The translations under genes were made by a program, and so were the position numbers. Below, one piece after another: positions 2,892 to 43,658 of a stretch of DNA of 64,000 bases (position 1 is the stretch's first letter; the number at the start of each line of letters is the position of its first letter). The notes beneath the pieces were generated by a model. The model was not told where the DNA came from. It saw only the letters and a program-made list of their open reading frames with translations, and did no database searches. The stretch covers positions 186,001 to 250,000 of the IMG/VR virus record IMGVR_UViG_3300023296_000874; one strand, given 5' to 3'.

Positions 2892-3914
2892 ATGACTATC
2901 AAGTGGACCGACATCACCCGCTTCAACAACCTGCGCCGTGGGTACCAGCTCCGAGAGGAGCGCGTACAGATTCCGCAGCCGACCCTGTCCTTCCGTGGGA
3001 AGGTGAAGCTCGACGGTACCAACGCTGCTGTACGGGTTGACCCCCGCTTCGTTGAGGGGCCTGGCTACCACGCTCAGAGCCGCTCCCGTGACATCGGCCT
3101 GTCTGATGACAACATGGGCTTCGCTGCCTGGGTTGAGCTCAACCGCAACTACTTCCTCCGACTTCGAGATGCTGCGGGCAAGACCGTAGTGATCTTCGGT
3201 GAGTGGTGTGGCAAGGGCATCCAGAAGCGTTGCTCCATCTCCAAGATCGACCGCAAGGTGTTCGCCGTGTTCGCCATCGAGGCGCACTTCCCCGAGGGGG
3301 AGGACACCAAGACCCGGATCCTCGTGGACCCGGACCTGATTCGTTCCCACCTCCCCGACCACCCGGACATCTACGTGATCCCGTGGGCCGAGGGTGAGGA
3401 CGTGACGGTGGACTTCGCGGATACCGAGAGCCTGGACGCCGCCGCGCTGATCTTCAACGAGCGCATCGACGAGGTTGAGACCTGCGACCCTTGGGTCAAG
3501 GCTACCTTCGACGTTGACGGGCTTGGGGAAGGCCTCGTGTACTACCCGCTGCTCCCCGGCGTAATCGGCAGCTCTGCTGTACGGGACGACGTGACCAGTG
3601 CCATGTTCAAGGCGAAGGGCGAGAAGCACGAAGTGAAGAAGCGGAAGAAGGCCGTTGAGGTGGACACCGAGGTGGTTGCCTCCGTTGAGGCCTTCGTGGA
3701 GATGTTCGTTACCGACAACAGGTGCGAGCAGGCTGTCACTACCGCGTGCAACGGTGAGTACGACCGCGTGTTCACCGGCAACTTCCTTCAGTGGGTTGGT
3801 GGCGACATCAAGAAGGAAAGTGGCGACGAGCTTGAGGCTGCTGGCCTCACCTGGAAGCAGGTGGGCAAGGGAGTTCAGAAGGCTGCTCGCACCTGGTTCT
3901 TCGCCCGCGCGTGA
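2892..3914 (+). CDS. RNA ligase, Rnl2 family
   Basis: Motifs KLDGTN (I), FGEWCG (III), EGLV (IV), FKAKGEKH (V) plus Rnl2-like C-terminal domain (FVTDNRCEQ...DIKKE). Confidence 0.85.
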   Translation: MTIKWTDITRFNNLRRGYQLREERVQIPQPTLSFRGKVKLDGTNAAVRVDPRFVEGPGYHAQSRSRDIGLSDDNMGFAAWVELNRNYFLRLRDAAGKTVVIFGEWCGKGIQKRCSISKIDRKVFAVFAIEAHFPEGEDTKTRILVDPDLIRSHLPDHPDIYVIPWAEGEDVTVDFADTESLDAAALIFNERIDEVETCDPWVKATFDVDGLGEGLVYYPLLPGVIGSSAVRDDVTSAMFKAKGEKHEVKKRKKAVEVDTEVVASVEAFVEMFVTDNRCEQAVTTACNGEYDRVFTGNFLQWVGGDIKKESGDELEAAGLTWKQVGKGVQKAARTWFFARA

Positions 3915-4699: not shown

Positions 4700-5179
4700 T
4701 CAGTATTTCTTACCGTCGAGCGTGGCTCGAGTACCCAACGCCCGGTCCACCCAATCGCTCCGGACGCCCCAGTTCAGATGCTGGTTCTTGCCCATGTGGT
4801 GAGCGTAGTGCGTAGTCGCGTGCTGCAAGGCCCATGCGGGGTTCTTGTGTGCCTTCCGATGCACTCGGATGTAGCTGAGGCCACTCAGTACGAGCCCAAG
4901 CACGAACCCGGCAATGAACCATCCGCCGAGCAGTAGGAGCGGGAGGTGGATCGCTACAGCGAAGGTCACCCAAAGGGCCTCACGTCGGGATCCGATGTCG
5001 TGCATGTTCTGACGGCGGCAGTTTCGGTGGTGCTCTCGGAAGTGGAACGCGAACATGTGGTCTTTCTTGAACCCAAACGGGTGAAGCAGCCATCTGTGGA
5101 TCGCATACTCAACGACATGCCCGTAAACCCAAGCAAGTCCAAGACCAACCACCGCCAATAGAACCATTGAAGCCTCCAC
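4700..5179 (-). CDS. Fatty acid hydroxylase / sterol desaturase family membrane enzyme
   Basis: His boxes EYAIHRWLLH, HFREHH, VHRKAH, HYAHH; NWGV..W.DRALGT; TM segments. Confidence 0.8.
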   Translation of the reverse strand: MEASMVLLAVVGLGLAWVYGHVVEYAIHRWLLHPFGFKKDHMFAFHFREHHRNCRRQNMHDIGSRREALWVTFAVAIHLPLLLLGGWFIAGFVLGLVLSGLSYIRVHRKAHKNPAWALQHATTHYAHHMGKNQHLNWGVRSDWVDRALGTRATLDGKKY

Positions 5180-5290
5180 TTCCTCCGCTGTCCGCGTACT
5201 GACTTCATTGTATGGGACACATGGATAAACCGCGATGAGTTCTCTGAGAAGCTCCTCATCTCACTCGTTACCTCGGAGCCGAAGCCGGAG

Positions 5291-5578
5291 GTGTCAGTGA
5301 AATTCCGAAGAGATGGGCAACGGAGCGCAGACTTCAGGAAGCCCTGCTACACCTACACGGTCCGAAACATCTGCTACATGCTGCTCCCTGAGTACAAGAC
5401 GGTCCAGAAGAAGGACTTCCGTAGGACGGGGAAGGCGTGGTGGTACGTCAAGGCAGGCAGGGTTGACATCCCGCCCTGCCTACGGTCTGCTCGCATGTTG
5501 ACCATTGCGGAAGCCTGCGCGTGGGCAGAGCGTGAGCTGTTCCCGACAAGATTGGCACTGCTTTTCGACGACGAATAG
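5291..5578 (+). CDS. Hypothetical protein
   Basis: GTG start after GGAG; stop abuts the glnS start. Confidence 0.5.
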   Translation: MSVKFRRDGQRSADFRKPCYTYTVRNICYMLLPEYKTVQKKDFRRTGKAWWYVKAGRVDIPPCLRSARMLTIAEACAWAERELFPTRLALLFDDE

Positions 5579-7189
5579 GTGTCTAAGGAGGTTGAGGAGA
5601 TCCACATGCCCGACTTCATCCGAGATGCCATCGACCGCCTACGTGCCGAACACCCGGACTGCGCGATCCAGACTCGGTTCCCTCCGGAGCCCAACGGGTA
5701 CCTCCACATCGGTCACGCGAAGGCCATCTGCCTCAACTTCGAGATCGCTCGGGAGTACGACGGCAAGTGCGTCCTCCGTTTCGACGACACCAACCCGGCT
5801 ACCGAGGACACCGAGTACTGCGAGGCCATCTTCGAGGATGTGAAGTGGCTCGGCTACACCCCGCACTCAATCCGGTACGCCAGCGACTACTTCCCAGCGC
5901 TCTACGCTTTGGCACTCGACCTCATCGAGGCCGACCTCGCCTACGTGGAAGAGTTGAGCGAGGCTGAGATCCGTGAGTACCGGGGCACCGTCAAGACGCC
6001 CGGCAAGCCATCACCCTTCAGGGACCGCACACGCAGCAAGAACCACGAGCTCTTCAGGGCTATGGCGAAGGGTGGTGTCGCAGAAGGCGAAATGGTGCTT
6101 CGCCTCAAGGGGGACCTCAGCAGCCCGAACATGAAGATGCGGGACCCTCTGATCTACCGCGTCAAGAGCACCCCGCACCACCGCACCGGGACCGATTGGT
6201 ACATCTACCCCTTCTACGATTTCGCTCACCCGCTGTCGGATGCGATTGAAGGAGTCACACACTCCCTCTGCACCCTCGAGTTCCAGAACAACCGCCCGCT
6301 CTACGACCGCTACCTTGAGCTCACCCACGCTGTACCCGTCCCCGTCCAGATGGAAATGGCCCGGTTCGAGATGACCTACACCGTCACCTCCAAGCGCAAG
6401 CTCAAGGAGTTGGTGGACAGTGGCGCTGTCGATGGGTGGAGCGACCCCCGTCTCCCCACGCTGGCGGGCTTGCGACGTAGGGGCGTGCCACCAACCGCCA
6501 TCACGGCGCTCATGGCCAGGGTGGGCGTGAGCAAGGCGAACAGCACCATCCCCGCCGCATGGCTGGAGGACGAGGTGCGCCGCGAGCTGAACATCACCGC
6601 GCCGCGTGCGATGGCCGTGCTCGATCCCCTGGAGATCGTACTCACCAACTACGAGGGTGAGGAGTTGTTCCCTACTGAGGATGGCAGCCGAGAGGTACCG
6701 TTCGGGAAGCGCATCTACATCGAAAGAAGAGACTTCATGCTCGAGCCGGTACGCAAGTTCAAGAGGCTTGCCCCCGGAGTTGAGGTGAGGCTGAAGCGTG
6801 CGTACCTCATCACCTGCAATGAGGTTGAGTACGACGCTGACGGAGAGGTTTCCCGACTGCTCTGCACTGTGGATTTGGACAGCCGGGGTGGAATGGCTGC
6901 TGACGGGCGCAAGGTACGCGGCACGGTTCACTGGGTGTCGGCTGATCACGCCGTCGACATGGAGGTACGTCTCTACGACCGCCTCTTCAACGTAGAAGCA
7001 CCGGGCAAGGCCGATGACATTCACGACGCCCTGAACCCTGACAGCGTCAAGACGATCACCGCGAAGTGTGAGCCGCACCTCGCCACCTTCGACGGGACCG
7101 TACAGTTCGAGAGAGAAGGCTACTTCGCCTCTGAGAACGGCGGGTGGAATCGCGTTAGTACTCTACGAGACACCTGGGCACGAAGGTAG
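5579..7189 (+). CDS. glnS: Glutaminyl-tRNA synthetase (full length)
   Basis: TRFPPEPNGYLHIGHAK (HIGH), LRFDDTNP, MRDPLIYR, YDFAHPLSDAIEGVTHSLCTLEF, TSKRKL, GTVHWVSA, QFEREGYF. Confidence 0.97.
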   Translation: MSKEVEEIHMPDFIRDAIDRLRAEHPDCAIQTRFPPEPNGYLHIGHAKAICLNFEIAREYDGKCVLRFDDTNPATEDTEYCEAIFEDVKWLGYTPHSIRYASDYFPALYALALDLIEADLAYVEELSEAEIREYRGTVKTPGKPSPFRDRTRSKNHELFRAMAKGGVAEGEMVLRLKGDLSSPNMKMRDPLIYRVKSTPHHRTGTDWYIYPFYDFAHPLSDAIEGVTHSLCTLEFQNNRPLYDRYLELTHAVPVPVQMEMARFEMTYTVTSKRKLKELVDSGAVDGWSDPRLPTLAGLRRRGVPPTAITALMARVGVSKANSTIPAAWLEDEVRRELNITAPRAMAVLDPLEIVLTNYEGEELFPTEDGSREVPFGKRIYIERRDFMLEPVRKFKRLAPGVEVRLKRAYLITCNEVEYDADGEVSRLLCTVDLDSRGGMAADGRKVRGTVHWVSADHAVDMEVRLYDRLFNVEAPGKADDIHDALNPDSVKTITAKCEPHLATFDGTVQFEREGYFASENGGWNRVSTLRDTWARR

Positions 7190-7192
7190 AAG

Positions 7193-7750
7193 ATGTACAC
7201 ACGCCACACTGCGACCCCACTTCCACGCGGCACCAAAGACGGCGACATGATGTCGATCCGCATCCTCGGTGACACGCCGGAGGATGGAGTGGAGGACTAC
7301 CCGTGCGAGTGGGTAGACGACGAAGCACCCGACGGCTACTGGGCTTGGGAGAACCGCTACGGCGAGAAGAGCTTCTACCCGGACGAGCTGGAAGACGACG
7401 TGGGTGCCAAGCTCTGCTGGATGGAGCTCCGACACTGCTGCGGCTCCATGCAGCAGCAGGTTGAGGGTTGCCACAAGCACCCCGAGGGCGAAGCGTGCCC
7501 GGACATCACCGTGCTCTACGACGCTCAGTACGACCGTTACTCACTGCCCCACTACCAGGGCATCATCGTGATGAAGTACTGCCCCTGGTGCGCCGCTGAC
7601 CGTGGCGACCGGATGGACCAGTGGTGGGCTCAGATTGAGAAGCTGCTCGGCGGCGACCCCGGTTTCGAGGAAGTGGCTGCCGCCAAGGCTGCTGGCAAGA
7701 TCCCCGACAAGTTCCTCACTGACGAGTGGTGGCGGAACCCAAGTGAGTAG
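7193..7750 (+). CDS. Cys-rich hypothetical protein (C-terminal half DUF6980-like, from recall)
   Basis: HCC..M...C.KH....CPD...YCPWC...D.WW..IE.L.G.DP...IP..F.TD.WW pattern. Confidence 0.5.
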   Translation: MYTRHTATPLPRGTKDGDMMSIRILGDTPEDGVEDYPCEWVDDEAPDGYWAWENRYGEKSFYPDELEDDVGAKLCWMELRHCCGSMQQQVEGCHKHPEGEACPDITVLYDAQYDRYSLPHYQGIIVMKYCPWCAADRGDRMDQWWAQIEKLLGGDPGFEEVAAAKAAGKIPDKFLTDEWWRNPSE

Positions 7751-13596: not shown

Positions 13597-13612
13597 CTAC
13601 AAAAGCATCATG
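13597..13612 (-). promoter_or_regulatory. Conserved 16-bp motif (putative late promoter, variant)
   Basis: ctacaaaagcatcatg; overlaps the CCA-gene TGA. Confidence 0.55.
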
Positions 13613-14822
13613 AAAGCATCTTGCTCACTGCCAGGTCCAGCTTGCGAGCCGAGATGTCCGGCTCTTGCAGGATGAGCCCACGCGCGTACGTCACGGGGAG
13701 GGATCGGTCCCGCCCTTGGAGGCTGTTCTCGTTGATGTGGCGCATGTTGTCCACCGGGGGCTTCGTGAGCTTCTTGAGGAAGTCCTGTGCGTCATCCCTT
13801 TGCATCGGCGTGGTCAGCTCCCGCAGGCGCTTCTGCTGGTCACGGTCAAGGAAGGTGATGGGGCTCTTGACGCTCAGGCCCAAGTCCATCAGGTCGAGCA
13901 GTAGCGCAACATCGCGGTCCTTGAGCTGGCGGCTCAGGTACGTGGCGAAGGGGCGCTGCTCCTGAACCATCTCAGCGATCACGTCGAGCAGTCCGAGCTT
14001 CTTCATCAGCTTGAGCGCATCCCGCGCCGTTGCTTCGTTCAGCACGTTCTCAACCAGGATCGTAGCGATTGCCTCCCACGGAGCCCGCTTCATGGCGGGT
14101 GCGTTGCGCTTGATGCTGGCAGCGAGGTCCTTGGGGATCTTGAAGCCGTACTTCGCAACGAACTTGATGGCGCGGAGCAGTCGTGTGGGGTCGTCGCTGA
14201 AGACGACGTCAGGGTCACGGGGGCAAGCCATCGTGCGGCTCTCCAGGTCGCGGATGCCGCAACCCGTGAGGTCGATCACTTCAGCCTTCTCCGGTCCGTT
14301 CGTCAGGTCCATCAGCCGCCAGAGCAGCGTGTTGAACGTGAACTCGCGGCGGTAGATGTCCTCCTCAACCGTGGCGTCTTCAACCATGTGAGGCTTGTAC
14401 CCCTGGCCTCCGGCTCCACCGTAGGATTCCTTTCGGGAGTTGGCGATCTCGATCACCTCCCCCTTCATCTCCACCCCGTCCAGAGTCCACTCACCCTTCA
14501 CCGTGATGATGGCGACGTTGTACTGGTTGGTCGTCAGGTCGGTCTGAGTGGGGATCGCCCGCTCAACTTCCTTGGCGAACCACTCGGAGTTCTTCTTGCC
14601 GCCCAAGGCCACGGAGTCGACTACGACGTCGATGTCCTTGATGGGCATGTCGATCAGGAAGTTCCGCACTGCACCACCGACAACGTACACGTGTCGGCCT
14701 ACACCCAGCCGGGTGGACAGGCGGGCAAGGAACTTCATCAATGCGTGAGAACGCTTGACAGCGTTTGCTGTCACGAGCTCTGCGGCGAGTTTGTCTGCGA
14801 TGTCTGTCATGGTGTACCTCAC
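13608..14822 (-). CDS. Class II tRNA nucleotidyltransferase (CCA-adding / PolyA_pol family)
   Basis: VYVVGGAVRN..KDIDV (DxD), EDIYRREFTFN, FSDDPTRLLRAIKF; no HD domain; no PAP upstream signature. Confidence 0.85.
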   Translation of the reverse strand: MRYTMTDIADKLAAELVTANAVKRSHALMKFLARLSTRLGVGRHVYVVGGAVRNFLIDMPIKDIDVVVDSVALGGKKNSEWFAKEVERAIPTQTDLTTNQYNVAIITVKGEWTLDGVEMKGEVIEIANSRKESYGGAGGQGYKPHMVEDATVEEDIYRREFTFNTLLWRLMDLTNGPEKAEVIDLTGCGIRDLESRTMACPRDPDVVFSDDPTRLLRAIKFVAKYGFKIPKDLAASIKRNAPAMKRAPWEAIATILVENVLNEATARDALKLMKKLGLLDVIAEMVQEQRPFATYLSRQLKDRDVALLLDLMDLGLSVKSPITFLDRDQQKRLRELTTPMQRDDAQDFLKKLTKPPVDNMRHINENSLQGRDRSLPVTYARGLILQEPDISARKLDLAVSKMLS

Positions 14823-34509: not shown

Positions 34510-34839
34510 TCATCTCTTCTTCATCCACGGGTACTTTCTATGTACCCCTCTGCTGCGCTGTCGCTTTCTGTATCTCTTAGTCGAAGGCTTGCGCTCAATA
34601 CGCTCCCGCCTACGCTTGTACTTCTTGCCCGCTGGTGTACGCGTCCATCGCCTGCGCTTTCTGCGCTCGTTCGACGGCTTGCGACGCCAGCGTGTCTTCC
34701 TCCGAATGCCACGGCGCTTGCCTGCATCGGATCGAGGTTTCTTTGCCGTCACATCGCTCGCCAACTCCATCATTTCCGTGCCCAGCTCGATGCTGTGCAT
34801 GGCAAGACGGATGGCGAGGCTGGTCAGGCATACTTTCAC
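34510..34839 (-). CDS. Protamine-like very basic protein
   Basis: 41 of the last 77 residues are K/R; GTG overlaps the protease TGA; fills the gap to the next promoter. Confidence 0.6.
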   Translation of the reverse strand: MKVCLTSLAIRLAMHSIELGTEMMELASDVTAKKPRSDAGKRRGIRRKTRWRRKPSNERRKRRRWTRTPAGKKYKRRRERIERKPSTKRYRKRQRSRGVHRKYPWMKKR

Positions 34840-36323
34840 TCAGGGGAGCCGTAGCTGAAGAGGTTTCCCTTGTAGATGAGCTGTCGGGCTACATCCATGG
34901 GGATCTTCCGGATTCCCGCTGCCTTGCCAATGGCATTGAGGTAGTCGAGTGGTGATTCAAAAGGTCCGGTGCCGCCTACCTTCGAGATGGCCTCGTTGGC
35001 TCTACGGCTAAGGGTCTCACCGCCGCGCTCGGCGTCAATGAAGTGGCTCAGGGCCAGGATCTCACGTCCGGAGAAGCCCTTGTCGGAAAGGCTCTTCCAA
35101 CCGGCAGTCTTGACACTCACCAACCCCTCGTAGAGGCGGTAGAGCATCAGGTCGCCACCGTAGCCAGCGTATCGGCTCTTGAAAGCGGAGAAGGCAAAGG
35201 TGCTGCGCACCAAGTTCTCGTTTCCGTTTTCCTTGCCGGTGTCTTGCTTGCCCTTCTCAACTCCACGCATCTCGTCACGGAGCTGGTTCCGTACCTGATC
35301 GCGGATCACCTGCTTCATGTCGTCGGTGATGTCGTCAATGGGGCTCTTGTCCGGTGTCGCGGGCGCTGCGGGCTTGTCCTCGCCGCCTTCCCCGTCTCCA
35401 CCATCGCCGCCCGCATCGTCGAAGTTAAAGCCACCCTGGCGGTGTACGAAGCTCTCAACCTTGTTGAGCGCTGCCTGTACCTCCGTGAGGTCAGAAGCGG
35501 CACGCTGCATAGCGTCTGCGTCCACAACGTTCACGGTCTCGAACGCAGCCTTGATGGTCTCAGCACTCACATCAGCGGCTTCCAGGATGTTCCGCATGAC
35601 GGCACCCTTGAAGGCTGGGTTGCCTACCCACGAGGCCTCAATGAATGTGACGCTGTCCTCATCATCCTTGTGGCCGCAGAGCTCGGCAATCTTGCGACGC
35701 TTACCCTTCTTGTCGAAGAAGTGGTTGCCCTTCATGTACTTGATGTGCTCGCACATCTGAGTATCGTCTTCAGCTACGTTTCCACACTTCGTGCAGACGG
35801 TGTAGTCAACCGTGCAACCCATGGAGAGGGTCGTGATCTCGCCACTCTTGATGTCCCGTACCAGGTCCTTGTGCTTGCGGTCCGTGGCTACGAGGATGTC
35901 AACGTAGACGGTCTCGCCAAGGTCGCGGGCTACTGCGTCAACAATCTTGCCCTTGCTCAGCTCGGGAATTTGAATGTGCTCAACGTAGTTCTCTGCACCA
36001 CGGAAGGTTCCGTAGGTGGCGAGGAGCAGGTCACGCTCCCAGGCATCTTCGTTGTTGTTGACGTACTTCTCAGTCTTCGCGGTGATCACGAAGGGCCAAC
36101 CACGGTCGTTGACGGGAGAAGCTTCTACGTCAACAGAGGCGATGATCGTGCAGTGCGTGAGAAGGAACTTCTCTGGGTTGTACTTGCTGGCGATCATGTC
36201 CGCGCCAGCCTGTCGGCTCATCTTGGAGCTGCCCGTCATGCCGTCCTTGCGAACAGCGGTCCAGTCATCAGCCTCGAGAGAGTGCCGAACAATCTTCGCC
36301 TTTGCGTATCGAAGCATTGACAT
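34836..36323 (-). CDS. Prohead (maturation) serine protease with Zn-finger insert
   Basis: NNNEDAW, NYVEH (His), TLSMGC (Ser), CTKCG...CEH, FIEASWVGNPAF. Confidence 0.75.
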   Translation of the reverse strand: MSMLRYAKAKIVRHSLEADDWTAVRKDGMTGSSKMSRQAGADMIASKYNPEKFLLTHCTIIASVDVEASPVNDRGWPFVITAKTEKYVNNNEDAWERDLLLATYGTFRGAENYVEHIQIPELSKGKIVDAVARDLGETVYVDILVATDRKHKDLVRDIKSGEITTLSMGCTVDYTVCTKCGNVAEDDTQMCEHIKYMKGNHFFDKKGKRRKIAELCGHKDDEDSVTFIEASWVGNPAFKGAVMRNILEAADVSAETIKAAFETVNVVDADAMQRAASDLTEVQAALNKVESFVHRQGGFNFDDAGGDGGDGEGGEDKPAAPATPDKSPIDDITDDMKQVIRDQVRNQLRDEMRGVEKGKQDTGKENGNENLVRSTFAFSAFKSRYAGYGGDLMLYRLYEGLVSVKTAGWKSLSDKGFSGREILALSHFIDAERGGETLSRRANEAISKVGGTGPFESPLDYLNAIGKAAGIRKIPMDVARQLIYKGNLFSYGSPE

Positions 36324-37825
36324 TAGCTACTCCTCGGAGTGCGGAGGTGGTCAAGTACATCCACGAGGCGGTTGTACGCTTCGCGGTTGAAGAGCCCGTC
36401 AGCGGTGTTGGCGCTGAGCAGGAAGAGTGCATCCCCGAAACCGTGGGTCTCAAGGTCATGGTGGAACTGGTCTGCCAAAACAGGCGAGGCGGTTCCGTCA
36501 CGTACCTCTTCATATAGAAGGTTCATGCCATCTGAACCGAGTACCTCTCGAAGCTCAATGGCTGAGGGGTTCATGCTGGCAACTACGCGCTGGAAGCCTA
36601 CTGCGTAGCGGGCATGTCGGTCAGCGTCGATGTCCTTCTGTACGCCAATCAGCCGTCCAATCTCCCTATCATCCACATCGAGCAGCTCACTTACCGAAAG
36701 GTCGGCAACGTAGGAGTAGATGCCCTCAATGGCTTCATCCGTGTAGTGGAACTGGTCTGCCTCGTCCATCACAGCCTTTCGGATGCGGACGCCAAGGCTT
36801 CCCTTGTGGCGGTTGAAGACGGAGCCATGTCCAACCAAGGAGTCGCGGAGCAGCTCGTAGAGCTCTTCGTCCGCTTCCTTCTTGAGCTGTCGCGTGGGTA
36901 GCTCATCCTCGTGAACGTGCATGTCACCCGAGTGGAGTCCCACTACGCCGGTTGCAGCGTCATTGTGGTAGATCTCGTGGTCCGGATGGTTCTTCTTCAG
37001 GTACGCAAGCACCTGGTTCTTCAGCGCGTCCCACTTCGAGTTCTTCTGAGTCGCAGCCGCAGTCTTCAGCGCCGCAAGGAGCATGTCGTCTTCGGCACCC
37101 GGAGGCACTCCGAACCCACTCTCCTCCACGTACCCAGGAAGCCCCTCGATGTCTGAGGGCTTGATACAGAACAGGCATTCGGGACACACGAAGAGGCGGG
37201 TGTGCTTCTTGTAGTTGGTCTTCTGGAGGTTCGCCCCACACTTGGGGCAGTCGGGCAGGCCGTCATCGAGCTCCCGCCGATTCATGCGGTACCTGCGTCC
37301 GGGGGCTGTCCAGTAGATTGCTTGGCGTACACTGTGGTCCGGGGCCTTGCACACGGAGGTGATGGCTCGGAAGCTGTCGACGCGGCTCAGGCCCTTGAAG
37401 GCACACTGCTGGGCCATTACCTGGAGCTTGGCTTGGGCGTCGAAGTAGTGAGCAGCGAGATGCTCTGCGCGGTCTACAAAAGGAGCCGCTGAGGCTCTCT
37501 TGGGCCAGGCGTAGCTGTATCCAACGGCGGTGCCGTCTTCAATGTGGCTCTGCGCAATGTCGTAGCTGCTGTAGGAGGTGTCGTACTGCGGCGGGATCGT
37601 GCGAACGTAGTTCGGGTTCGCGATCACCAGCTCATCCGCACTCACACGCTCATTGCCCCATGGGAACTCAGCGTCAACGAATCCGATTCCGGGGTGTACG
37701 GCGGTCACCGTCCCACTCACATCGGAAGCCCCCCCGTCGAGGCTGTTCCTTCGGTAAACGACGTCGCCTCTTGCGAAGTTCTTCGCCAAGAGCCAGTAGT
37801 CAACGAATGCTTTCTTGTCAGCCAT
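36323..37825 (-). CDS. Head-operon protein with SH3-like N-domain and Zn ribbon
   Basis: FARGDVV...GTVTAVHPGIGFVDAEFPWG; CPKC...CPEC; TAATG coupling to the protease. Confidence 0.6.
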   Translation of the reverse strand: MADKKAFVDYWLLAKNFARGDVVYRRNSLDGGASDVSGTVTAVHPGIGFVDAEFPWGNERVSADELVIANPNYVRTIPPQYDTSYSSYDIAQSHIEDGTAVGYSYAWPKRASAAPFVDRAEHLAAHYFDAQAKLQVMAQQCAFKGLSRVDSFRAITSVCKAPDHSVRQAIYWTAPGRRYRMNRRELDDGLPDCPKCGANLQKTNYKKHTRLFVCPECLFCIKPSDIEGLPGYVEESGFGVPPGAEDDMLLAALKTAAATQKNSKWDALKNQVLAYLKKNHPDHEIYHNDAATGVVGLHSGDMHVHEDELPTRQLKKEADEELYELLRDSLVGHGSVFNRHKGSLGVRIRKAVMDEADQFHYTDEAIEGIYSYVADLSVSELLDVDDREIGRLIGVQKDIDADRHARYAVGFQRVVASMNPSAIELREVLGSDGMNLLYEEVRDGTASPVLADQFHHDLETHGFGDALFLLSANTADGLFNREAYNRLVDVLDHLRTPRSS

Positions 37826-38601
37826 CAGGAGGCCCCTCCGTCTGAGTCCGCATCAGTAATGGCAGCCGCGAGGCTCCACTTCAAAATGCGAAGGGTGCTG
37901 GTGGAGGAGTCTTCTACGAAGCCCTTGCCCACCTGTGCTTTCGCCTTGCTTTGAGCAAAGGCTTCTGCCCGCTGGTAGCTGTCGAAGAGGTGTCCGGTTT
38001 CCCAGTAGCGTGGGTAGATGCGGCCAAAGTTGCGGAGCACGCCGTAGTCGATCTTCACAACCCAGTTGAAGTCGTCAGCGAATACGGCACATGCCCAGAA
38101 CTTGTCCTTGGCTCCACCCTTGTCGAGCTTGTAGGCTTTCGCCCACGGCTCGTGAGATCCAACGGTTGAGCTCCGAATGCGGTCCAGGCTTGCAACAGCC
38201 TTCTTGCCTTCGGCTTCCGCCTTGTCTACCAACCCTTCGTAGTCATCGAAGGAGTACCAAGTGTCCCGGTAGCCGGAACCCTTCATATCCACCTTCATCG
38301 CGTCATAGTCCTTGGCAGGATCCATACACGCGAGAAACCACGACCACTTCTTGTGCGTTACCCGGCGTACGTCACGATTCCAGAAGTCTCTGGCTGAGCA
38401 ACGGGCGGAAACCACCCGAAGCTCAATCATGTCGTAGTCATCCCGGCTCCCGAGGGAGCCTTCGGGCTCGTCATGTGTTTGGTACACAATCACCGTGAAT
38501 CCATTGTCAGCATGACGCCAAAGCGTCGTACCACCACGCCCCAACTCGTCACGAGCTGCGGTGTGGATCACTGATGATGGTTCCGGTGTTGCGTACCTCA
38601 T
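37825..38601 (-). CDS. Hypothetical protein with C-terminal WGR-like domain
   Basis: DKFWAC.V.....VKIDYG...G...AEAFAQSKAKAQVGKGFVE. Confidence 0.5.
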   Translation of the reverse strand: MRYATPEPSSVIHTAARDELGRGGTTLWRHADNGFTVIVYQTHDEPEGSLGSRDDYDMIELRVVSARCSARDFWNRDVRRVTHKKWSWFLACMDPAKDYDAMKVDMKGSGYRDTWYSFDDYEGLVDKAEAEGKKAVASLDRIRSSTVGSHEPWAKAYKLDKGGAKDKFWACAVFADDFNWVVKIDYGVLRNFGRIYPRYWETGHLFDSYQRAEAFAQSKAKAQVGKGFVEDSSTSTLRILKWSLAAAITDADSDGGAS

Positions 38602-38620
38602 ACTGACAGGCCCTCATCGC

Positions 38621-39142
38621 TCAGGAGCGCTTGGGAGCCTGACGGACGTACCGAGCGCCAGTGGAAGCCTTGCGGCCAACCTCAGCGTGCGGGCTGCCAC
38701 CAACGTAGGGCTGCGAAGGCTGCTTCTTGAATCCGTCAGAGTACTGGCTGAGCTCCTGAATGGGGCTCTCAGTACGCTCCGTCACTACAGAACCGGAGCC
38801 CTGGGTGGGGTGTACGCCACCGCCCTGGTACTCGAAGGTCTGCATGTACGTCTCGTCGGGGTTCGTCTTCTGGCCTTCGATGTAGCCGGGGCTGTCACCG
38901 AAGTTGTCCGCCATGTACTTCTCGGGGTCCTGGGGATCACCCTGAAGCAGCTTGGCCTGCTTCTGAGCAGTAGCGATGGAGGTACGCTCGATCTCGTCGC
39001 AGATGGAGTCCACCTCAAAGGCGAAGTCCAGAGCCTGCTTCTGAGAAAGACCGAGGCCTTCGTAGTTGGCTTCGAGGGTCTTGGCGATGCTGGAAAGACG
39101 GCCAACGTAGCGTCCGGCCTCGCGTGCAGTAAGAGTTCTCAT
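38621..39142 (-). CDS. Hypothetical head-operon protein
   Basis: AAGGAG RBS before ATG 39142. Confidence 0.6.
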   Translation of the reverse strand: MRTLTAREAGRYVGRLSSIAKTLEANYEGLGLSQKQALDFAFEVDSICDEIERTSIATAQKQAKLLQGDPQDPEKYMADNFGDSPGYIEGQKTNPDETYMQTFEYQGGGVHPTQGSGSVVTERTESPIQELSQYSDGFKKQPSQPYVGGSPHAEVGRKASTGARYVRQAPKRS

Positions 39143-39161
39143 GGTTGAGCTCCTTGGGGGA

Positions 39162-40082
39162 TCAAATGGTCGGGTTGCGGAAGTTGTCGAGGTAGTCGTC
39201 GTCAGGATCTCGCTGAATGACGCCACCGTCTTCAAACAGCTTGCGCCACCGTTCATCCTTAGTCACACCGGGGTCGATGTGGGAGTCGGCAGGCCTGCCG
39301 TAGTACTGTGACGGGTCAAAAAACTGGTCTTTCTTGTCGGCCCGCTTCTGCTCATTCACTTCGGACGGAACATAAACCTCATGGTGAAGGTCGTAGTCCA
39401 AGCCGCCGAGCCTGTTCAGAAGAGTCAGATAGGTAGGCGCGTCGATTTTGCCCGCGTACTTCCCACCATCAAGGCTCCAGATTGTTTCATCCAGGGCCTT
39501 CCGGAACGCCGCGTCCCGGTTATCAGCGAGGACGCGAGCGTCCACTGAAGTCTTTGCAGTCGTCACGAGCCTGTCGTGGTCGTCTGCTGTGATCATTGAA
39601 GGGTTGAAAGGCTCCACTCGGTTCCACACCGGCCACGTTGCCGTGTTGGTCTGGCGCTCAGGTAGAGGCTCACCCTGAATGAACTTGGTGCCGCAAGGAG
39701 AGCGTGTGACGCGGGTGTACCGTGCCTGCTTGTACCGGCTATCCAGCCGGGCAAAGGTAGCGGCAGCCAGAGTCGGCCACGAGCGGGGATCGTTGATGTC
39801 AACGTCCACACTGGCGTGAATCGCGCGTACGTCGCCAAGGTCCGGGTTTACACCTCGGAACTGCAAAGCAAGCCGGATGGCTGCTTCCTCAATGGCTACA
39901 TGGCTCTTCATGCTCAAGTCCTTCTTCTCCTTCTTCCTCTGCAAGTCACTATCGTCCTCGCGGTAGCGTTCCTTCCGCTTGTCGTAGCGGGGCGGCTTCT
40001 CTTTAGGGGCAGGCTTAATCTGCCCCTTGGAGTACTCGTCCTGCTTCTCAGCTTCGGATTTTGTCGCTACGCGATGACCCAT
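39162..40082 (-). CDS. Hypothetical head-operon protein
   Basis: First gene after the late motif at 40123. Confidence 0.6.
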   Translation of the reverse strand: MGHRVATKSEAEKQDEYSKGQIKPAPKEKPPRYDKRKERYREDDSDLQRKKEKKDLSMKSHVAIEEAAIRLALQFRGVNPDLGDVRAIHASVDVDINDPRSWPTLAAATFARLDSRYKQARYTRVTRSPCGTKFIQGEPLPERQTNTATWPVWNRVEPFNPSMITADDHDRLVTTAKTSVDARVLADNRDAAFRKALDETIWSLDGGKYAGKIDAPTYLTLLNRLGGLDYDLHHEVYVPSEVNEQKRADKKDQFFDPSQYYGRPADSHIDPGVTKDERWRKLFEDGGVIQRDPDDDYLDNFRNPTI

Positions 40083-40122
40083 TGATGTGTGACCCGGTAG
40101 AGGTGAGCTCGGGACCCCCCGT

Positions 40123-40138
40123 CTACAAAAGGATTATG
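40123..40138 (-). promoter_or_regulatory. Conserved 16-bp motif (consensus copy)
   Basis: ctacaaaaggattatg, 41 nt upstream of 40082. Confidence 0.75.
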
Positions 40139-40147
40139 AGCCGAAGA

Positions 40148-41752
40148 TCAGAAGCGCTCTTCCCCCGCGCTCTCCTTGATTTTCAGTCCAAGGTGCTCAA
40201 CGACGATATCCAGAAGGTTGGATTTCTCCGCGAGCTGTCCGCCAATGTCACCCAAGGCGTTTCGAATCGCCTCGTTGAAGTTGGCGTCATTGAGCGTGAA
40301 TGCATCGCGCTGGAGCTTCTCTTCCACGTCAGCAGCGTCGATGTTGAAGAGGTCGAGGATGAAGCTCACGGGCAAGCTTCCCTTCTGGTACAGGTCGAAC
40401 AGGGCGCTGAAGACGTCCTGGTTGTCGGCCAGTGCCATACGGTTGAAGCTCAGGCGCGGGTAGATGGGCTTGTCGTATCCCCACGCATCCTTCTCCACGA
40501 ATCCCATCTTGATTGCTACGGGCTTGAAGAGGAAGTCCTCAACGTACTCCTGAACCATCATGCGGTAGTTCATGAAGCGCTCGTTCATGACGTGCAGGCT
40601 CAACCGGTTGCCGGTGAACGTACCTTCGCCAGTGAGCAGCTCGAGCGTCACGCCAAGGCCAACCATGAGCTGACGGTCCGTGATGTCGTACTCGTTGCTC
40701 AGGTCAAGCAGGCGGTCGTTGCTACCGTACTCTTCCCAGTTCACCTGGTAGTTGGCAACAATGGAGAAGTCAGGGTCCATCAGGGCAAGGTCCACCATCT
40801 CGCGGAGCTCATCAACCTGCATTTCGTCAAGCCCCTCTCCCCACACGACGCGCTTCGGGGTCATGTTGCGGCTTGCGATACTTGTCTGAGCCTGACGTAG
40901 CTTGTCGCGGTACAGCAACACGCGCAGGCACCGTTCCAAAATGGAGGAGCCAAACTTGCTGCGAGGCCTACGCCTACGAGCAAGGTGGTAGCAGAAAGAG
41001 CCCTGCATGGGATCGGAGTCCAGGGGGAGGTTCTCTCCCATCTGGATGTACTCCACGATCTCGGGCGGCATCTTCTCAACCTTGCGCATGGCAAGGGGGT
41101 CAACCTGGGCGTCACGCACGGCGCGACGGTCTTCTTCCGAGGGTACGAACTCGATGTCTACTTCGTCGGAGAAGCTGTAGCCCTTGACGTCAACCTGATC
41201 GGTCTCAAGGATGGTGAGCTTGCGCCACCCACGGTAGTCTTCGCCTTCCTTGTCATCGTCCTCAGCGAAGATGAAGACGTTGCCGTCCAACCAGTAGAGG
41301 TGCGTGATCTCGTGCAGGCGTCGTGTGAGCCTGAGATCATCCACCATCTTCTGAAAGTAGGCCATCACCTTGTCAGCGGTCTCCTTGTCCTCACATTTCG
41401 GCTTGGAGAGGCGGACCTTGCTCAAGGGGATCTCGGTCAGGATGTCGAGTGCCTGCCCAACCATGGGGTCAGTCTCGTAGTAGTGCCTGAACCACTCGTG
41501 CTTCTCACGGTCACTCTGAGGCAGCTCGAGGAAGTCCGTGCTGAGCTGAGGGCTGAAGAAGTTGAATCCAGAGCTCTGGATTACACCACCACCCGGAGCA
41601 CCAACACGAGTGTTGAACTGTACGCCATTGGTGGAGCGGGCAACACGCTTCAGACGTCGAGCGATGACTTGATCATTGCCACGTCGGGAGATTGTGGGTC
41701 CGGGTGCCGGAGCACCAGATCCACTACTTTCGTTGTTGTTGTCGTCAGGCAT
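40148..41752 (-). CDS. Portal protein
   Basis: 534 aa between TerL and protease; YYETDPMVGQALDI, YWLDGNVFI, GSSILERCLR.L...DKLRQAQ.SIA.R..TP, GLGVT..LL.GEG. Confidence 0.85.
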   Translation of the reverse strand: MPDDNNNESSGSGAPAPGPTISRRGNDQVIARRLKRVARSTNGVQFNTRVGAPGGGVIQSSGFNFFSPQLSTDFLELPQSDREKHEWFRHYYETDPMVGQALDILTEIPLSKVRLSKPKCEDKETADKVMAYFQKMVDDLRLTRRLHEITHLYWLDGNVFIFAEDDDKEGEDYRGWRKLTILETDQVDVKGYSFSDEVDIEFVPSEEDRRAVRDAQVDPLAMRKVEKMPPEIVEYIQMGENLPLDSDPMQGSFCYHLARRRRPRSKFGSSILERCLRVLLYRDKLRQAQTSIASRNMTPKRVVWGEGLDEMQVDELREMVDLALMDPDFSIVANYQVNWEEYGSNDRLLDLSNEYDITDRQLMVGLGVTLELLTGEGTFTGNRLSLHVMNERFMNYRMMVQEYVEDFLFKPVAIKMGFVEKDAWGYDKPIYPRLSFNRMALADNQDVFSALFDLYQKGSLPVSFILDLFNIDAADVEEKLQRDAFTLNDANFNEAIRNALGDIGGQLAEKSNLLDIVVEHLGLKIKESAGEERF

Positions 41753-42125
41753 TCATATTCTCCTGCTGGGCGGCGATTGCGGCGCGTCGAGCAGCTTGCT
41801 GCTCTCTGCGTGCGGCGACCCGTTCTATTTCTTTGTTTCGTGCGGCTATCTGATCTTCGGGCCTTGTGTAGTCAGGGACCGAAACAGATTGCAGAGCTCC
41901 CAAGGCAGAGCTCACAGCCCGCTTGGTTCTCCGCAACCTAATGATGAAGCCGCTGTGGGCGGTGGTCATCTTCCTGTATAGAGGGTCCTGCCGTGCGGCC
42001 CTGTCGTCAGCTACTGCCAACTGCTCAATCTGAGCGTGAATCTCAGAGAGCCTGGATGCTGCCGCCACCGCGTCTGCGCGTGCGGATGCCTCTTGAGCAA
42101 TCAGTTCCAGAACACCATCGGCCAT
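41745..42125 (-). CDS. Hypothetical coiled-coil protein
   Basis: Overlaps the portal start; alpha-helical composition. Confidence 0.55.
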   Translation of the reverse strand: MADGVLELIAQEASARADAVAAASRLSEIHAQIEQLAVADDRAARQDPLYRKMTTAHSGFIIRLRRTKRAVSSALGALQSVSVPDYTRPEDQIAARNKEIERVAARREQQAARRAAIAAQQENMNA

Positions 42126-42718
42126 CAGAACAACCGGATATCGACACCGAGCGTATTGTCGTTGTCAGTAGAGGGAATCATCCACACCGTTCCAACCTGG
42201 ATCGGTGTGCCAATCCCTGCCGCTGTAGCATCGGCAAGGGTGGTTAGGTATCCCCTGTCACTGACGTAAACCGCGTCATTCAGTGAATAGGAAAGTGCGA
42301 TTCCTGAGGAGGTCCGATCTCCAAAGGTGTACTTCTCGAACATCTTGAAGACGAAGGTCCCATCGAACATCATGGTAACGACGCGCGTGCTCGACGGCTT
42401 GTAGGAAGAGTAGTTGTACTCCGTGCTCCGGAGGTCAAAACTGCCCGGCGTCTGAACTTGAGGGTGAAAGTCAGATCCACGAATGAGGAACCCAGTGGCG
42501 GCAGTGCCATCACTCTGTCCCACCACTCGGATGTTCTTGACGTTGTTGGCCGGTCCGAAGGAGTTGGAGGTGTACATCACCCACTGCCCTCCGCGCCAGC
42601 CATCAGCACCATCACCACCACTCGACGCAAGCGTGTCATTCACGTACACGGGGACGTTCATCCCCTTGTACTGAATTACAACGTCATGATTCTGCTGATG
42701 GTTGTCTCTTACTCCCAC
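42125..42718 (-). CDS. Putative structural protein (decoration-like beta fold)
   Basis: YSLNDAVYVSDRGYLT..IQVGTV..P echoes the 32470..33090 C-terminus; AGGAG RBS. Confidence 0.5.
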   Translation of the reverse strand: MGVRDNHQQNHDVVIQYKGMNVPVYVNDTLASSGGDGADGWRGGQWVMYTSNSFGPANNVKNIRVVGQSDGTAATGFLIRGSDFHPQVQTPGSFDLRSTEYNYSSYKPSSTRVVTMMFDGTFVFKMFEKYTFGDRTSSGIALSYSLNDAVYVSDRGYLTTLADATAAGIGTPIQVGTVWMIPSTDNDNTLGVDIRLF

Positions 42719-42744
42719 GGTAGCTCCTCGTCAGCCAGTTGGGT

Positions 42745-43584
42745 CTACTCGCCCTCTTCTTCTGTCGCTGCAGCCATCACCCACTCATCGTACTCCTTCT
42801 CCCAACCGGAGGGGCGCTTGCGCAGACGTCCGAGGTAGAGCACCTGGCCCGTAGTCGGGTTCATGGAGCGTGGGTAGGTTGCACGCTGCTGCGGGAAGAG
42901 GCTGAAGTACCAGTCCTTCACCGCGCCACTCTTGGCGTCCTGGGTCTTGAGTACGAGTCCGGTGTAGTAGATGCGCGAGCGCTCTTCGCCCTTGTCGGAA
43001 CCACGGTCCACGTAGTCCTGCACCAGCTTGAGGTTGTCTGCACTCGGAGGAGGTCCGCCCTTCTTCGAGAAGTACACCACTTCGAAGATCTTGGAAGCGC
43101 GGCTTCGGTCTCCGTCCTCACCGGGCTCGCCGTTGCTTGTAGCTGCGGCTGCGGGCGTGTGGCGGTAGAGGCCAACCTTGGAGCCCTTGGTACCACCCTC
43201 AACCCGAAGGATGTTGGGCAGGCGGGGATCCTCGAAGTTCAGGATCACGTCCTCACCATCAACCTCGTCGATAGTGGCAACAGCGTCGTGAAGAGGGCCG
43301 AGGAGGTCCTGAAGGTGTCCGGGCACCTTGCGCTTGTCGATGCGAACCATCTCACCGCGCGCCAGTGGCTGTCCACGCTTCGAGGGCTTGTACTCCTTGT
43401 GGGGCACACCCTGACGCTCAAGGAATGTGGCGCACTCACGCTGAGATACGCGGTCGTTCTTCATGATGCACCATTCCACGAACTTCTCAGTCTCGGGCTT
43501 GATGGCGACCTTGTCGTGGGCTTCTACGTCGGTAGAACCCAGCACTTCCAGTGCAAGGCTCTGGGCGAGCTTATCATAGTTCAT
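42745..43584 (-). CDS. Hypothetical late protein
   Basis: First gene after the late motif at 43631. Confidence 0.6.
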   Translation of the reverse strand: MNYDKLAQSLALEVLGSTDVEAHDKVAIKPETEKFVEWCIMKNDRVSQRECATFLERQGVPHKEYKPSKRGQPLARGEMVRIDKRKVPGHLQDLLGPLHDAVATIDEVDGEDVILNFEDPRLPNILRVEGGTKGSKVGLYRHTPAAAATSNGEPGEDGDRSRASKIFEVVYFSKKGGPPPSADNLKLVQDYVDRGSDKGEERSRIYYTGLVLKTQDAKSGAVKDWYFSLFPQQRATYPRSMNPTTGQVLYLGRLRKRPSGWEKEYDEWVMAAATEEEGE

Positions 43585-43630
43585 GTTGGGATCTCCCGAA
43601 AGGGGGTAGTAGGTGTCTCATCTCAGCCCG

Positions 43631-43646
43631 GTACAAAAGGAATATG
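43631..43646 (-). promoter_or_regulatory. Conserved 16-bp motif (putative late promoter)
   Basis: gtacaaaaggaatatg, 47 nt upstream of 43584. Confidence 0.7.
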
Positions 43647-43658
43647 TCCGGTCTGGGA

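What the first reader, a model, noticed from the sequence alone, without database searches (positions are those of the whole stretch)
5579..7189. Full-length glutaminyl-tRNA synthetase in a phage
Seen: a complete GlnRS. Residues equivalent to the E. coli anticodon contacts appear retained by eye (PRAM for R341, FKRL for K401/R402, VRL for R410, QFER for Q517/R520). The MSK loop reads TSK, and the loop after NYEG is a few residues shorter. Established: aaRS genes are rare in phages, and many bacteria lack GlnRS and use GatCAB transamidation. Inference: a direct Gln-tRNA supply that bypasses or backs up the host route. It does not look like a stop-codon recoding synthetase.
Basis: partly seen in the sequence, partly recalled or inferred. 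Interest (0 to 1): 0.6.

Follow-up and report, generated by a model that had tools for sequence, protein, structure and literature searches.

The report
Intact glutaminyl-tRNA synthetase in jumbo phage
An uncultured 257-kb tailed phage from Ace Lake, Antarctica, carries a complete and apparently working glutaminyl-tRNA synthetase, plus a lysyl-tRNA synthetase, a CCA-adding enzyme and an RNA ligase but no tRNA genes; this is a rare but already documented kind of phage cargo.

Summary
Window 5579-7189 (+) encodes a full-length GlnRS, though the likelier start is ATG 5606 (527 aa). Every catalytic and tRNA-contact residue I mapped from E. coli GlnRS is kept, and the predicted fold superposes on E. 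coli GlnRS-tRNA structures at TM 0.92.

The contig is a contractile-tailed jumbo phage. Tail genes lie to the left of the gene and head protease, portal and terminase to the right. The locus was assembled independently in several Ace Lake samples, so it is not a chimera.

The gene is old cargo:
- Its composition matches the phage genome.
- Strain variants give pN/pS of about 0.08.
- It is at most 59% identical to any of 5.8 billion proteins.
- It sits on a long branch, sister to an uncultured bacterial GlnRS-YqeY fusion clade.
- It has lost the YqeY appendix and a 9-residue hairpin.

The most likely role is to keep host tRNA-Gln charged during infection, as a supplement. Bypass of GatCAB is neither supported nor excluded, because the host is unknown. 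There is no sign of stop-codon recoding. This is a new member of a known kind.

The parts
5606..7189 (+). glnS: glutaminyl-tRNA synthetase CDS, 527 aa from ATG 5606.
   Evidence: TIGR00440 623.8 bits; Pfam PF00749, PF03950, PF20974. E. coli GlnRS E 1e-175. AF2 model pLDDT 83.8, and Foldseek TM 0.92 to 4jyz_A. The database gene call starts at M10.
5594..5599 (+). Shine-Dalgarno-like GAGGAG, 6 nt before ATG 5606 (AAGGAGG at 5585-5591 lies just upstream)
   Evidence: Read directly from the sequence.
5705..5716 (+). HIGH motif (H43-I-G-H46)
   Evidence: Residue map against E. coli H40-H43; invariant in 119 homologues.
6386..6394 (+). T270-S-K272, the class I KMSKS-type loop (MSK in E. coli)
   Evidence: T occurs in 28 of 119 homologues and in the sister clade P0006/P0008/P0020.
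6644..6697 (+). Shortened hairpin of the beta-barrel anticodon-binding region (TNYEGE...VPF, 17 aa). It lacks about 9 residues, including the near-invariant P369 of E. coli.
   Evidence: 17 aa against 24-31 in 119 cellular homologues and 23-33 in 79 viral GlnRSs.
5291..5578 (+). Small upstream ORF (93-95 aa, no family) whose stop abuts the GlnRS leader; probably co-transcribed
7193..7750 (+). DUF6980 protein, which starts 4 nt after the GlnRS stop; probably co-transcribed
   Evidence: PF22400 E 8e-15.
2892..3914 (+). RNA ligase (PF09414 family), 1.7 kb upstream
   Evidence: PF09414 41.6 bits against a cut-off of 27.
13608..14822 (-). tRNA nucleotidyltransferase (CCA-adding enzyme family), 6.4 kb downstream
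   Evidence: phrog_2244 E 7e-30; PF01743 E 5e-16.
34836..45470 (-). Phage head module on the right flank: head maturation protease 34836-36323, portal 40148-41752, terminase large subunit 43659-45470
   Evidence: PHROGs matches.

Best explanation
This is a genuine, intact and very probably active glutaminyl-tRNA synthetase encoded by an uncultured contractile-tailed jumbo phage. The contig is 257.5 kb and about 81% complete. It came from the 0.1-um fraction of the upper zone of Ace Lake, Antarctica.

The gene was captured long ago from a bacterium whose GlnRS is of the GlnRS-YqeY fusion type. Since then it has taken on phage composition, lost the YqeY appendix and a 9-residue surface hairpin, and evolved about 2.6 times faster than cellular homologues, while staying under purifying selection.

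The contig has no tRNA genes, so the enzyme must charge host tRNA-Gln (inferred). The contig also carries a class II LysRS, a CCA-adding enzyme and an RNA ligase. Together these most likely keep the host tRNA pool intact and charged while the phage takes over translation. That makes the GlnRS a supplement or backup to host charging, not a new decoding function (inferred).
For: Identity and integrity:
- Family scores are above the curated cut-offs, with a full-length match to E. coli GlnRS.
- R33, HIGH, Y213, C231, Q257, R262, TSK-K272, R343, K395/R396, R404, Q509/E511/R512 are all conserved.
- The AF2 model superposes on E. coli GlnRS-tRNA complexes at TM 0.92 and rmsd 2.4 A.

Phage context:
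- Tail sheath, baseplate and DNA polymerase lie to the left; head protease, portal and TerL lie to the right.
- The source sample is a 0.1-um filter fraction.

Not chimeric:
- The same neighbourhood occurs on 8 contigs from at least 3 samples.
- Single contigs span 3500-9400 with no joints.
- A strain about 1% divergent bridges the upstream junction.

Selection and age:
- 11 synonymous and 3 nonsynonymous differences, pN/pS 0.08.
- GC3 and codon usage are typical of the phage genome.
- The protein is a singleton, at most 59% identical to any relative.
- Its terminal branch is 1.14 against a median of 0.43.

Origin:
- It is sister to P0006/P0008/P0131 with SH-aLRT 98 (LG+G4) and 96 (LG+C20).
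- It shares the rare states T270, V138 and K395 with that clade.
- Those relatives and the next outgroups carry YqeY. The phage has no PF02637 match anywhere.

Toolkit:
- LysRS 614 bits, CCA-adding enzyme, RNA ligase.
- No tRNA by ARAGORN or Rfam.

Against: - No activity or expression data exist; none of the 18 runs that hold the locus is RNA.
- The contig is only about 81% complete, so tRNA genes could lie in the missing part.
- The phage protein departs from the consensus at 10 of 165 near-invariant columns, the most of any sequence compared.
- It lacks a hairpin containing the near-invariant P369.
- It lacks the YqeY domain. In Deinococcus GlnRS, removing that domain raises the KM for tRNA 24- to 100-fold (PMC1865053). 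Its efficiency on host tRNA is therefore uncertain.
- The host is not identified, so 'supplement' versus 'bypass' rests on phylogenetic analogy.
Confidence: 0.7

Rival explanations
1. GatCAB bypass. The host lacks GlnRS and makes Gln-tRNA-Gln by transamidation. The phage enzyme gives a direct route that is independent of host ND-GluRS and GatCAB.
For: - Many bacteria lack GlnRS; GatB/YqeY-domain genes are found in 12 of 14 control genomes.
- The host is unknown.
- From my own knowledge, not tested here: the upper zone of Ace Lake holds abundant taxa that commonly lack GlnRS, such as cyanobacteria and actinobacteria.
Against: - Huge-phage aaRSs generally branch with those of their host phylum (PMC7162821).
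- Here both GlnRS and LysRS branch beside cellular clades that own a GlnRS. 340 of 401 sampled genomes of the Myxococcota phylum sample have one.
- The partner enzyme is LysRS, not AsnRS, so the pair is not the 'transamidation-replacing' pair.
Confidence: 0.17
2. Counter-defence module. GlnRS, LysRS, RNA ligase and CCA-adding enzyme together repair, recharge or shield tRNAs that host anticodon nucleases or 3'-end-damaging toxins attack during infection.
For: - An RNA ligase lies 1.7 kb upstream and a CCA-adding enzyme 6.4 kb downstream of GlnRS.
- LysRS is present. From my own knowledge: tRNA-Lys is the classic anticodon-nuclease target.
Against: - The genes are not one operon; they differ in strand and are interspersed with unrelated genes.
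- No polynucleotide kinase/phosphatase was seen, though only about 70 of 264 proteins were scanned.
- Phage codons are 85% CAG and 94% AAG, so the U34 isoacceptors typically targeted matter little.
- An extra aaRS does not by itself mend cleaved tRNA.
Confidence: 0.1
3. Degenerate or repurposed enzyme. After losing YqeY and the hairpin and accumulating substitutions at conserved sites, the protein no longer aminoacylates efficiently and serves another role, such as RNA binding or regulation.
For: - 10 departures at near-invariant columns, including W242R, R307T and F258M in E. coli numbering.
- The unique hairpin deletion.
- Loss of YqeY.
Against: - All known catalytic, glutamine-binding and tRNA-identity contacts are kept.
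- pN/pS is 0.08.
- The fold is confidently predicted as a full GlnRS.
- E. coli-type GlnRSs work without YqeY.
Confidence: 0.05
4. Assembly chimera or host contamination at this locus.
For: The gene lies in a 28-kb '+'-strand island of cellular-type genes: ABC transporter parts, a carbamoyltransferase, Cpn10 and an aldolase.
Against: - Independent assemblies from different dates give the same neighbourhood.
- One contig at uniform depth of about 39x, with no joints.
- Phage structural genes on both flanks.
- Composition identical to the rest of the genome.
- No cellular protein is more than 59% identical.
Confidence: 0.02

Closest known systems
Bacterial GlnRS, E. coli type (PDB 1GTR, 1QTQ, 4JYZ)
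   Same: - Same five-domain architecture (TM 0.92).
- HIGH motif and an MSK-type loop.
- Gln-pocket residues R30, Y211, C229, Q255.
- Unpairing loop, G36 loop (K401/R402), C34 contact R410, U35 contacts R341/Q517/R520.
- No YqeY appendix.
   Different: - 53% identity.
- TSK instead of MSK.
- N at D235 (natural in 39 of 119 homologues).
- K at R412.
- P at E323.
- About 9 residues missing from the hairpin after NYEG, and a shorter C-terminal tail.
- Encoded by a phage.
GlnRS-YqeY fusion proteins (NF011291; Deinococcus radiodurans GlnRS, PDB 2HZ7; uncultured clade P0006/P0008/P0131)
   Same: - Closest relatives by tree and by shared rare residues (T270, V138, K395).
- The phage core scores above the NF011291 cut-off (709.6 against 681).
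   Different: - The phage protein stops at the end of the core (profile positions 10-558 of 769) and has no YqeY domain; none exists anywhere on the contig.
- Its branch is about 2.6 times longer.
aaRS genes of huge phages (Al-Shayeb et al. 2020), including GlnRS in the 630-640 kb phages LR745206 and LR756502
   Same: - A large phage carries translation genes that are related to, but distinct from, cellular ones.
- tRNA-repair or tRNA-ligation genes accompany them.
   Different: - Those megaphage GlnRSs were acquired separately and nest within Bacteroidota.
- Such phages usually carry many tRNAs, whereas none is found here.
- This phage has only two aaRSs.
glnS of Escherichia phage D6 (P1-like)
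   Same: An annotated GlnRS in an isolated phage.
   Different: The D6 copy is nearly identical to E. coli glnS (branch 0.011), so it is a recent host pick-up. The Ace Lake copy is ancient, matches phage composition and is divergent.

Membership tests
Glutaminyl-tRNA synthetase (class Ib, TIGR00440 glnS) | Whole-protein score above the curated equivalog cut-off | tested here: met
   623.8 bits against 425.8. The GluRS models all fall below their own cut-offs.
Glutaminyl-tRNA synthetase (class Ib, TIGR00440 glnS) | Class I signature motifs HIGH and KMSKS-type (MSK) | tested here: met
   H43-I-G-H46 is present. The second motif reads V-T-S-K272-R-K; T at the M position occurs in 28 of 119 homologues, and S and K are invariant.
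Glutaminyl-tRNA synthetase (class Ib, TIGR00440 glnS) | Glutamine-specific pocket residues (E. coli R30, Y211, C229, Q255) | tested here: met
   R33, Y213, C231 and Q257.
Glutaminyl-tRNA synthetase (class Ib, TIGR00440 glnS) | Two beta-barrel anticodon-binding domains with the G36 loop and the C34/U35 contacts that separate tRNA-Gln from tRNA-Glu | tested here: met
   PF03950 and PF20974 match. K395/R396, R404, K406, R343 and Q509/R512 are present. The roles of these residues are taken from PMC2978374.
Glutaminyl-tRNA synthetase (class Ib, TIGR00440 glnS) | Acceptor-stem unpairing loop (E. coli 132-141, L136) | tested here: met
   The loop is present without any indel. V138 sits at the L136 position, and V occurs in 23 of 119 homologues and in the sister clade.
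Glutaminyl-tRNA synthetase (class Ib, TIGR00440 glnS) | Catalyses tRNA-dependent Gln activation and Gln-tRNA-Gln formation | not testable with these tools
   This needs an enzyme assay. The only indirect support is purifying selection (pN/pS 0.08).
GlnRS/YqeY fusion protein (NF011291) | C-terminal YqeY (GatB_Yqey, PF02637) domain fused to the GlnRS core | tested here: not met
   The match covers profile positions 10-558 of 769 only. No PF02637 match is found in six-frame translation of the whole contig.
Tailed jumbo phage (Caudoviricetes, contractile tail) | Hallmark genes on the same contig: terminase, portal, head protease, tail sheath, baseplate | tested here: met
   IMG/VR virus record, linear, CheckV completeness 81%. 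0.1-um size fraction.
Stop-codon-recoding phage translation kit | Suppressor tRNA, in-frame reassigned stops, or an aaRS with altered anticodon recognition | tested here: not met
   No tRNA at all. TGA, TAG and TAA all terminate called genes (166, 69 and 29), with 87% coding density under code 11. Anticodon contacts are unchanged.

The most novel reading that the evidence does not exclude
GlnRS and LysRS, together with the nearby RNA ligase and CCA-adding enzyme, form a phage counter-measure against host defences that cleave, trim or deplete specific tRNAs. The streamlined GlnRS (no YqeY, truncated hairpin) would be adapted to bind and recharge, or to shield sterically, host tRNA-Gln under attack. 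A related possibility is that the hairpin deletion changes how the enzyme reads the wobble base or its 2-thio modification.
Probability: 0.1. Interest if true: 0.7.

Novelty: new member of a known kind. Interest (0 to 1): 0.35.

Why it matters
Phage-encoded aaRSs are known from huge-phage surveys, but almost none has been tested biochemically.

This one is a clean case. It is intact, under selection, has long been phage-resident, and is the most compact bacterial-type GlnRS among about 200 compared. It occurs with LysRS, a CCA-adding enzyme and an RNA ligase but without tRNAs.

It could serve two purposes. First, it offers a tractable test of whether phage aaRSs simply boost charging of host tRNAs. 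Second, it is a natural experiment on what a GlnRS can lose (the YqeY domain and a conserved hairpin) and still work.

It does not open a new category.

Tried and rejected
- **AsnRS hypothesis.** A second aaRS hit (PF00152) raised the idea of a GlnRS+AsnRS 'transamidation-replacement' pair. NCBIfam shows it is class II LysRS, so the idea was rejected.
- **Naming the donor.**
  - The sister-clade proteins carry no organism names.
  - Their MAG (GCA_046766275.1) is not among the held genomes.
  - HisD from that MAG is at most 55% identical to anything named.
  - A 401-genome sample of the phylum of G003 (a Myxococcota-labelled genome) gave at most about 62% identity to the sister GlnRS.
  - The JGI members of the clade come from samples other than the Ace Lake metagenomes found here.
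  - The donor phylum stays unresolved.
- **Close viral relatives of the GlnRS.** None in IMG/VR. A profile scan found 106 viral GlnRS loci, all at most 55% identical and none with the short hairpin.
- **Relatives of the phage.** Two fragments, with tail sheath 66% and 40% identical, have no GlnRS-family hit, but they are only 4% and 39% complete.
- **Proteome bias.** Gln is 3.2% and Lys 4.4% of the phage proteome, which is unremarkable.
- **Promoter and terminator scan around the gene.** Nothing above the shuffled expectation.
- **Role of the deleted hairpin.** My recollection of an 'Asn370' contact found no support in the literature search. The key paper on the 2-thio pocket (PMC4521407) is not held.
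- **Mixture-model tree on 98 rows.** It did not finish, so I redid it on 43 rows.
- **Alternative stop-codon readings.** These were only counted in a script as a negative control. No sequence was translated under another code.
- **Read laying.** It was given 5,901 letters.
Full report
**1. The observation**

An ORF runs from 5579 to 7189 on the + strand (536 aa from GTG). Family and structure searches agree on what it is:
- Pfam finds the class I Glu/Gln catalytic domain and both beta-barrel anticodon-binding domains.
- NCBIfam gives glnS TIGR00440 at 623.8 bits (cut-off 425.8). All GluRS models fall below their cut-offs.
- It aligns end to end with E. coli GlnRS structures at E about 1e-175.

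The sequence just upstream reads TAG-GTG-TCT-AAGGAGG-TT-GAGGAG-ATCCAC-ATG. GAGGAG followed by a 6-nt spacer favours ATG 5606 as the start. The public gene call also begins there (527 aa).

**2. Functional residues**

I took E. coli glnS by reference and aligned it with the phage protein and 119 nearest homologues. Residues are given below in the 536-aa numbering, with the mature E. coli equivalent in brackets.

| Role | Phage residue (E. coli) |
|---|---|
| HIGH motif | H43-I-G-H46 |
| Gln pocket | R33 (R30), Y213 (Y211), C231 (C229), Q257 (Q255) |
| R260 equivalent | R262 (R260) |
| KMSKS-type loop | V-T270-S-K272-R-K |
| U35 contacts | R343 (R341), Q509/E511/R512 (Q517/E519/R520) |
| G36 loop | K395/R396 (K401/R402) |
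| C34 contacts | R404/K406 (R410/R412) |
| Unpairing loop | V138 (L136) |

- The roles of these residues come from PMC2978374.
- TSK is a natural variant: T occurs in 28 of 119 homologues.
- N237 at the D235 position occurs in 39 of 119.

Two features stand out:
- The NYEG..VPF hairpin is 17 residues. It is 24-31 in all 119 cellular homologues and 23-33 in 79 viral GlnRSs. The near-invariant P369 is lost with it.
- The core is the shortest of all sequences compared: 536 columns against 545-577.

The phage protein departs from the consensus at 10 of 165 columns that are at least 95% conserved. That is the most of any sequence (median 1), but none of these is a known contact.

An AlphaFold2 model (pLDDT 83.8, pTM 0.80) superposes on E. 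coli GlnRS bound to native tRNA-Gln (4jyz_A) at TM 0.92/0.91 and rmsd 2.4 A.

**3. Is it really in a phage, and is the locus real?**

The genome is one linear contig of 257,533 bp at 59.5% GC, and the window is 186,001-250,000 of it. IMG/VR lists it as a virus record with CheckV completeness 81%. My crude gene call gives 264 genes, 87% coding density and long co-directional arrays.

PHROGs places phage genes on both sides of the GlnRS:
- Left of the window: tail sheath, baseplate wedge, tail spike and DNA polymerase.
- Right of the GlnRS: head maturation protease (34836-36323), portal (40148-41752) and terminase large subunit (43659-45470).

The nearest tail sheaths belong to other huge phages: LR745208 (485 kb), Tunturiibacter phage Tunturi_5 and Bacillus phage G.

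The exact protein, with the same neighbours, lies on 8 contigs from at least three samples. Supplement 3 of PMC7416419 identifies the two JGI samples as Ace Lake, Antarctica, upper zone, 0.1-um filter:
- 21 Aug 2014 at 13 m.
- 25 Nov 2013 at 12.5 m.

Eighteen 'salt lake metagenome' runs hold the locus. In two of them, a single 21-kb contig covers 3500-9400 at about 39x without joints. Two other runs hold a strain about 1% divergent, with a contig that bridges the upstream junction. The chimera rival is therefore rejected.

**4. Selection and age**

- The divergent strain differs from the window at 14 positions in the gene: 11 synonymous and 3 nonsynonymous (D61G, D419G, A534T). This gives pN/pS of about 0.08. 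The counts are small and the contigs are at low depth, but the direction is clear.
- Gene GC (0.618), GC3 (0.80) and codon-usage score (45th percentile) match the phage genome.
- In a 5.8-billion-protein collection the protein is a singleton, and the best relatives are 56-59% identical.

**5. Origin**

The eighty nearest named bacterial GlnRSs span more than 12 phyla at 49-54% identity. The phage protein is sister to an unnamed clade (P0006/P0008/P0020 or P0131) in two trees:
- 98 rows, LG+G4: SH-aLRT 98.
- 43 rows, site-heterogeneous LG+C20: SH-aLRT 96.

Its terminal branch is 1.14, against a median of 0.43. The clade shares the rare states T270, V138 and K395 with the phage. It is cellular: one member lies on an 87.6-kb contig of MAG GCA_046766275.1 among housekeeping genes. 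The next neighbours are Polyangiaceae/Myxococcales, Gemmatimonadota, Thermoanaerobaculia and Armatimonadota sequences.

All of these relatives carry a C-terminal YqeY domain. The phage protein ends at the core, and no YqeY domain is encoded anywhere on the contig. By parsimony, the phage copy lost it. In Deinococcus GlnRS this domain is a cis-acting tRNA-affinity enhancer (PMC1865053).

I could not name the donor phylum.

Other phage GlnRSs are independent acquisitions. Those of the megaphages LR745206 and LR756502 and two IMG/VR huge phages nest in Bacteroidota. The Escherichia phage D6 copy is essentially E. coli glnS.

**6.

- ARAGORN finds no tRNA or tmRNA in the whole contig. Rfam at gathering thresholds finds no family at all.
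- A six-frame family search found a second synthetase at genome 58,817-60,310 (-). It is a class II LysRS (NF001756 614.5 bits, TIGR00499 568.4 bits).
  - It too is a near-singleton, at most 61-62% identical to relatives.
  - It sits on a long branch (0.70 against a median of 0.19).
  - It is sister to a small clade that includes two Myxococcota-labelled MAG proteins (SH-aLRT 92).
- Nine other families gave no hit in the contig: eight further aaRS Pfam families and the YqeY domain.
- A tRNA nucleotidyltransferase lies 6.4 kb downstream of GlnRS (window 13608-14822, -).
- An RNA ligase of family PF09414 lies 1.7 kb upstream (2892-3914).
- The GlnRS sits in a 28-kb '+'-strand island of cellular-type auxiliary genes.

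**7. How it most likely works**

Shown:
- The GlnRS is intact, conserved and under selection.
- It lies in a phage genome.
- LysRS, a CCA-adding enzyme and an RNA ligase accompany it.

Inferred:
- With no phage tRNA on the contig, its substrate is host tRNA-Gln.
- The set keeps host tRNAs intact and charged while the phage redirects translation. This is the general model proposed for huge phages (PMC7162821).

On supplement versus bypass:
- Huge-phage aaRSs usually track the host phylum.
- Both enzymes here branch beside lineages that have GlnRS.
- 340 of 401 sampled genomes in the Myxococcota phylum sample have one.

I therefore favour 'supplement or backup' over 'bypass of GatCAB', but the host is unknown. 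Phage Gln and Lys content is ordinary, and the codons are mostly CAG and AAG.

Recoding is not supported: all three stop codons terminate genes, and the anticodon contacts are unchanged.

**8. Comparison and novelty**

aaRSs in huge phages were described in 2020, and GlnRS genes exist in several megaphages. This is therefore a new member of a known kind. Its particular points are:
- The streamlined architecture: no YqeY, a unique hairpin deletion, and the shortest core.
- The GlnRS+LysRS pairing.
- The lack of tRNA genes.

Whether the deleted hairpin touches the wobble-base pocket could not be settled. A GlnRS surface loop is reported to form a 2-thio pocket for s2U34 (PMC5372745), but the primary paper was not available.

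**9. Limits**

- No expression or activity data.
- The contig is about 81% complete.
- Only about 70 of 264 proteins were scanned against family libraries.
- Tree supports are SH-aLRT from short searches.
- The pN/pS rests on 14 sites from low-depth contigs.

Noticed in passing
Genome 58,817-60,310 (-), outside the window; L101:6817-8310 (-): Second phage aaRS: a full-length class II lysyl-tRNA synthetase (497 aa; NF001756 614 bits). It is at most 62% identical to any relative, sits on a long branch, and is sister to Myxococcota-labelled MAG proteins.
   Followed up: yes
window 13608-14822 (-): tRNA nucleotidyltransferase (CCA-adding enzyme family; phrog_2244 E 7e-30, PF01743 E 5e-16), in a phage that has no tRNA genes on the contig.
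   Followed up: partly
window 2892-3914 (+): RNA ligase (PF09414). Together with the CCA-adding enzyme it suggests tRNA repair. No polynucleotide kinase was found among the proteins scanned.
   Followed up: partly
window 1781-2446 (+); L101:8437-10008 (-); L009:8044-10125 (-): NAD-related genes scattered across the phage: a PARP-like catalytic domain, a nicotinate phosphoribosyltransferase-like protein next to LysRS, and a NUDIX-domain protein. They may relate to NAD+ salvage or to countering NAD-depleting defences.
   Followed up: no
L010:1384-4795 (+) and L010:9070-10005 (+) (genome 171.4-180.0 kb): Cellular-type auxiliary genes in the same '+'-strand island: an OmpA/NMT1-like substrate-binding protein, an ABC permease, an ABC ATPase, and an aspartate/ornithine carbamoyltransferase.
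   Followed up: no
window 8315-8539 (-): A 74-aa ORF with a lipoprotein-like signal peptide (…LALVGC) followed by DDDDSA-type acidic repeats.
   Followed up: no
window 4358-4651 (-), 4700-5179 (-), 8621-9250 (-): A Cpn10/GroES homologue, a fatty-acid hydroxylase family protein and a class II aldolase flank the GlnRS.
   Followed up: no
window 7193-7750 (+): A Cys/His-rich DUF6980 protein starts 4 nt after the GlnRS stop and is probably co-transcribed. Its function is unknown.
   Followed up: no
window 5273: The co-occurring strain has a 6-bp insertion (CGGAGC) in the divergent intergenic region upstream of the GlnRS operon (run X4).
   Followed up: no
L198:347-4423 (JGI 3300072910) and L099:8071-12214: In the bacterial sister clade a Ser/Thr protein kinase gene lies immediately upstream of GlnRS-YqeY. 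On one contig the two are called as a single 1358-aa product, which may be a real fusion or a gene-call artefact.
   Followed up: no
L004:17678-19963 (-) (genome 77,678-79,963): The phage encodes a DNA topoisomerase I (phrog_13226 E 4e-135). Its best phage match is annotated topA in Microcystis phage MaAM05.
   Followed up: no
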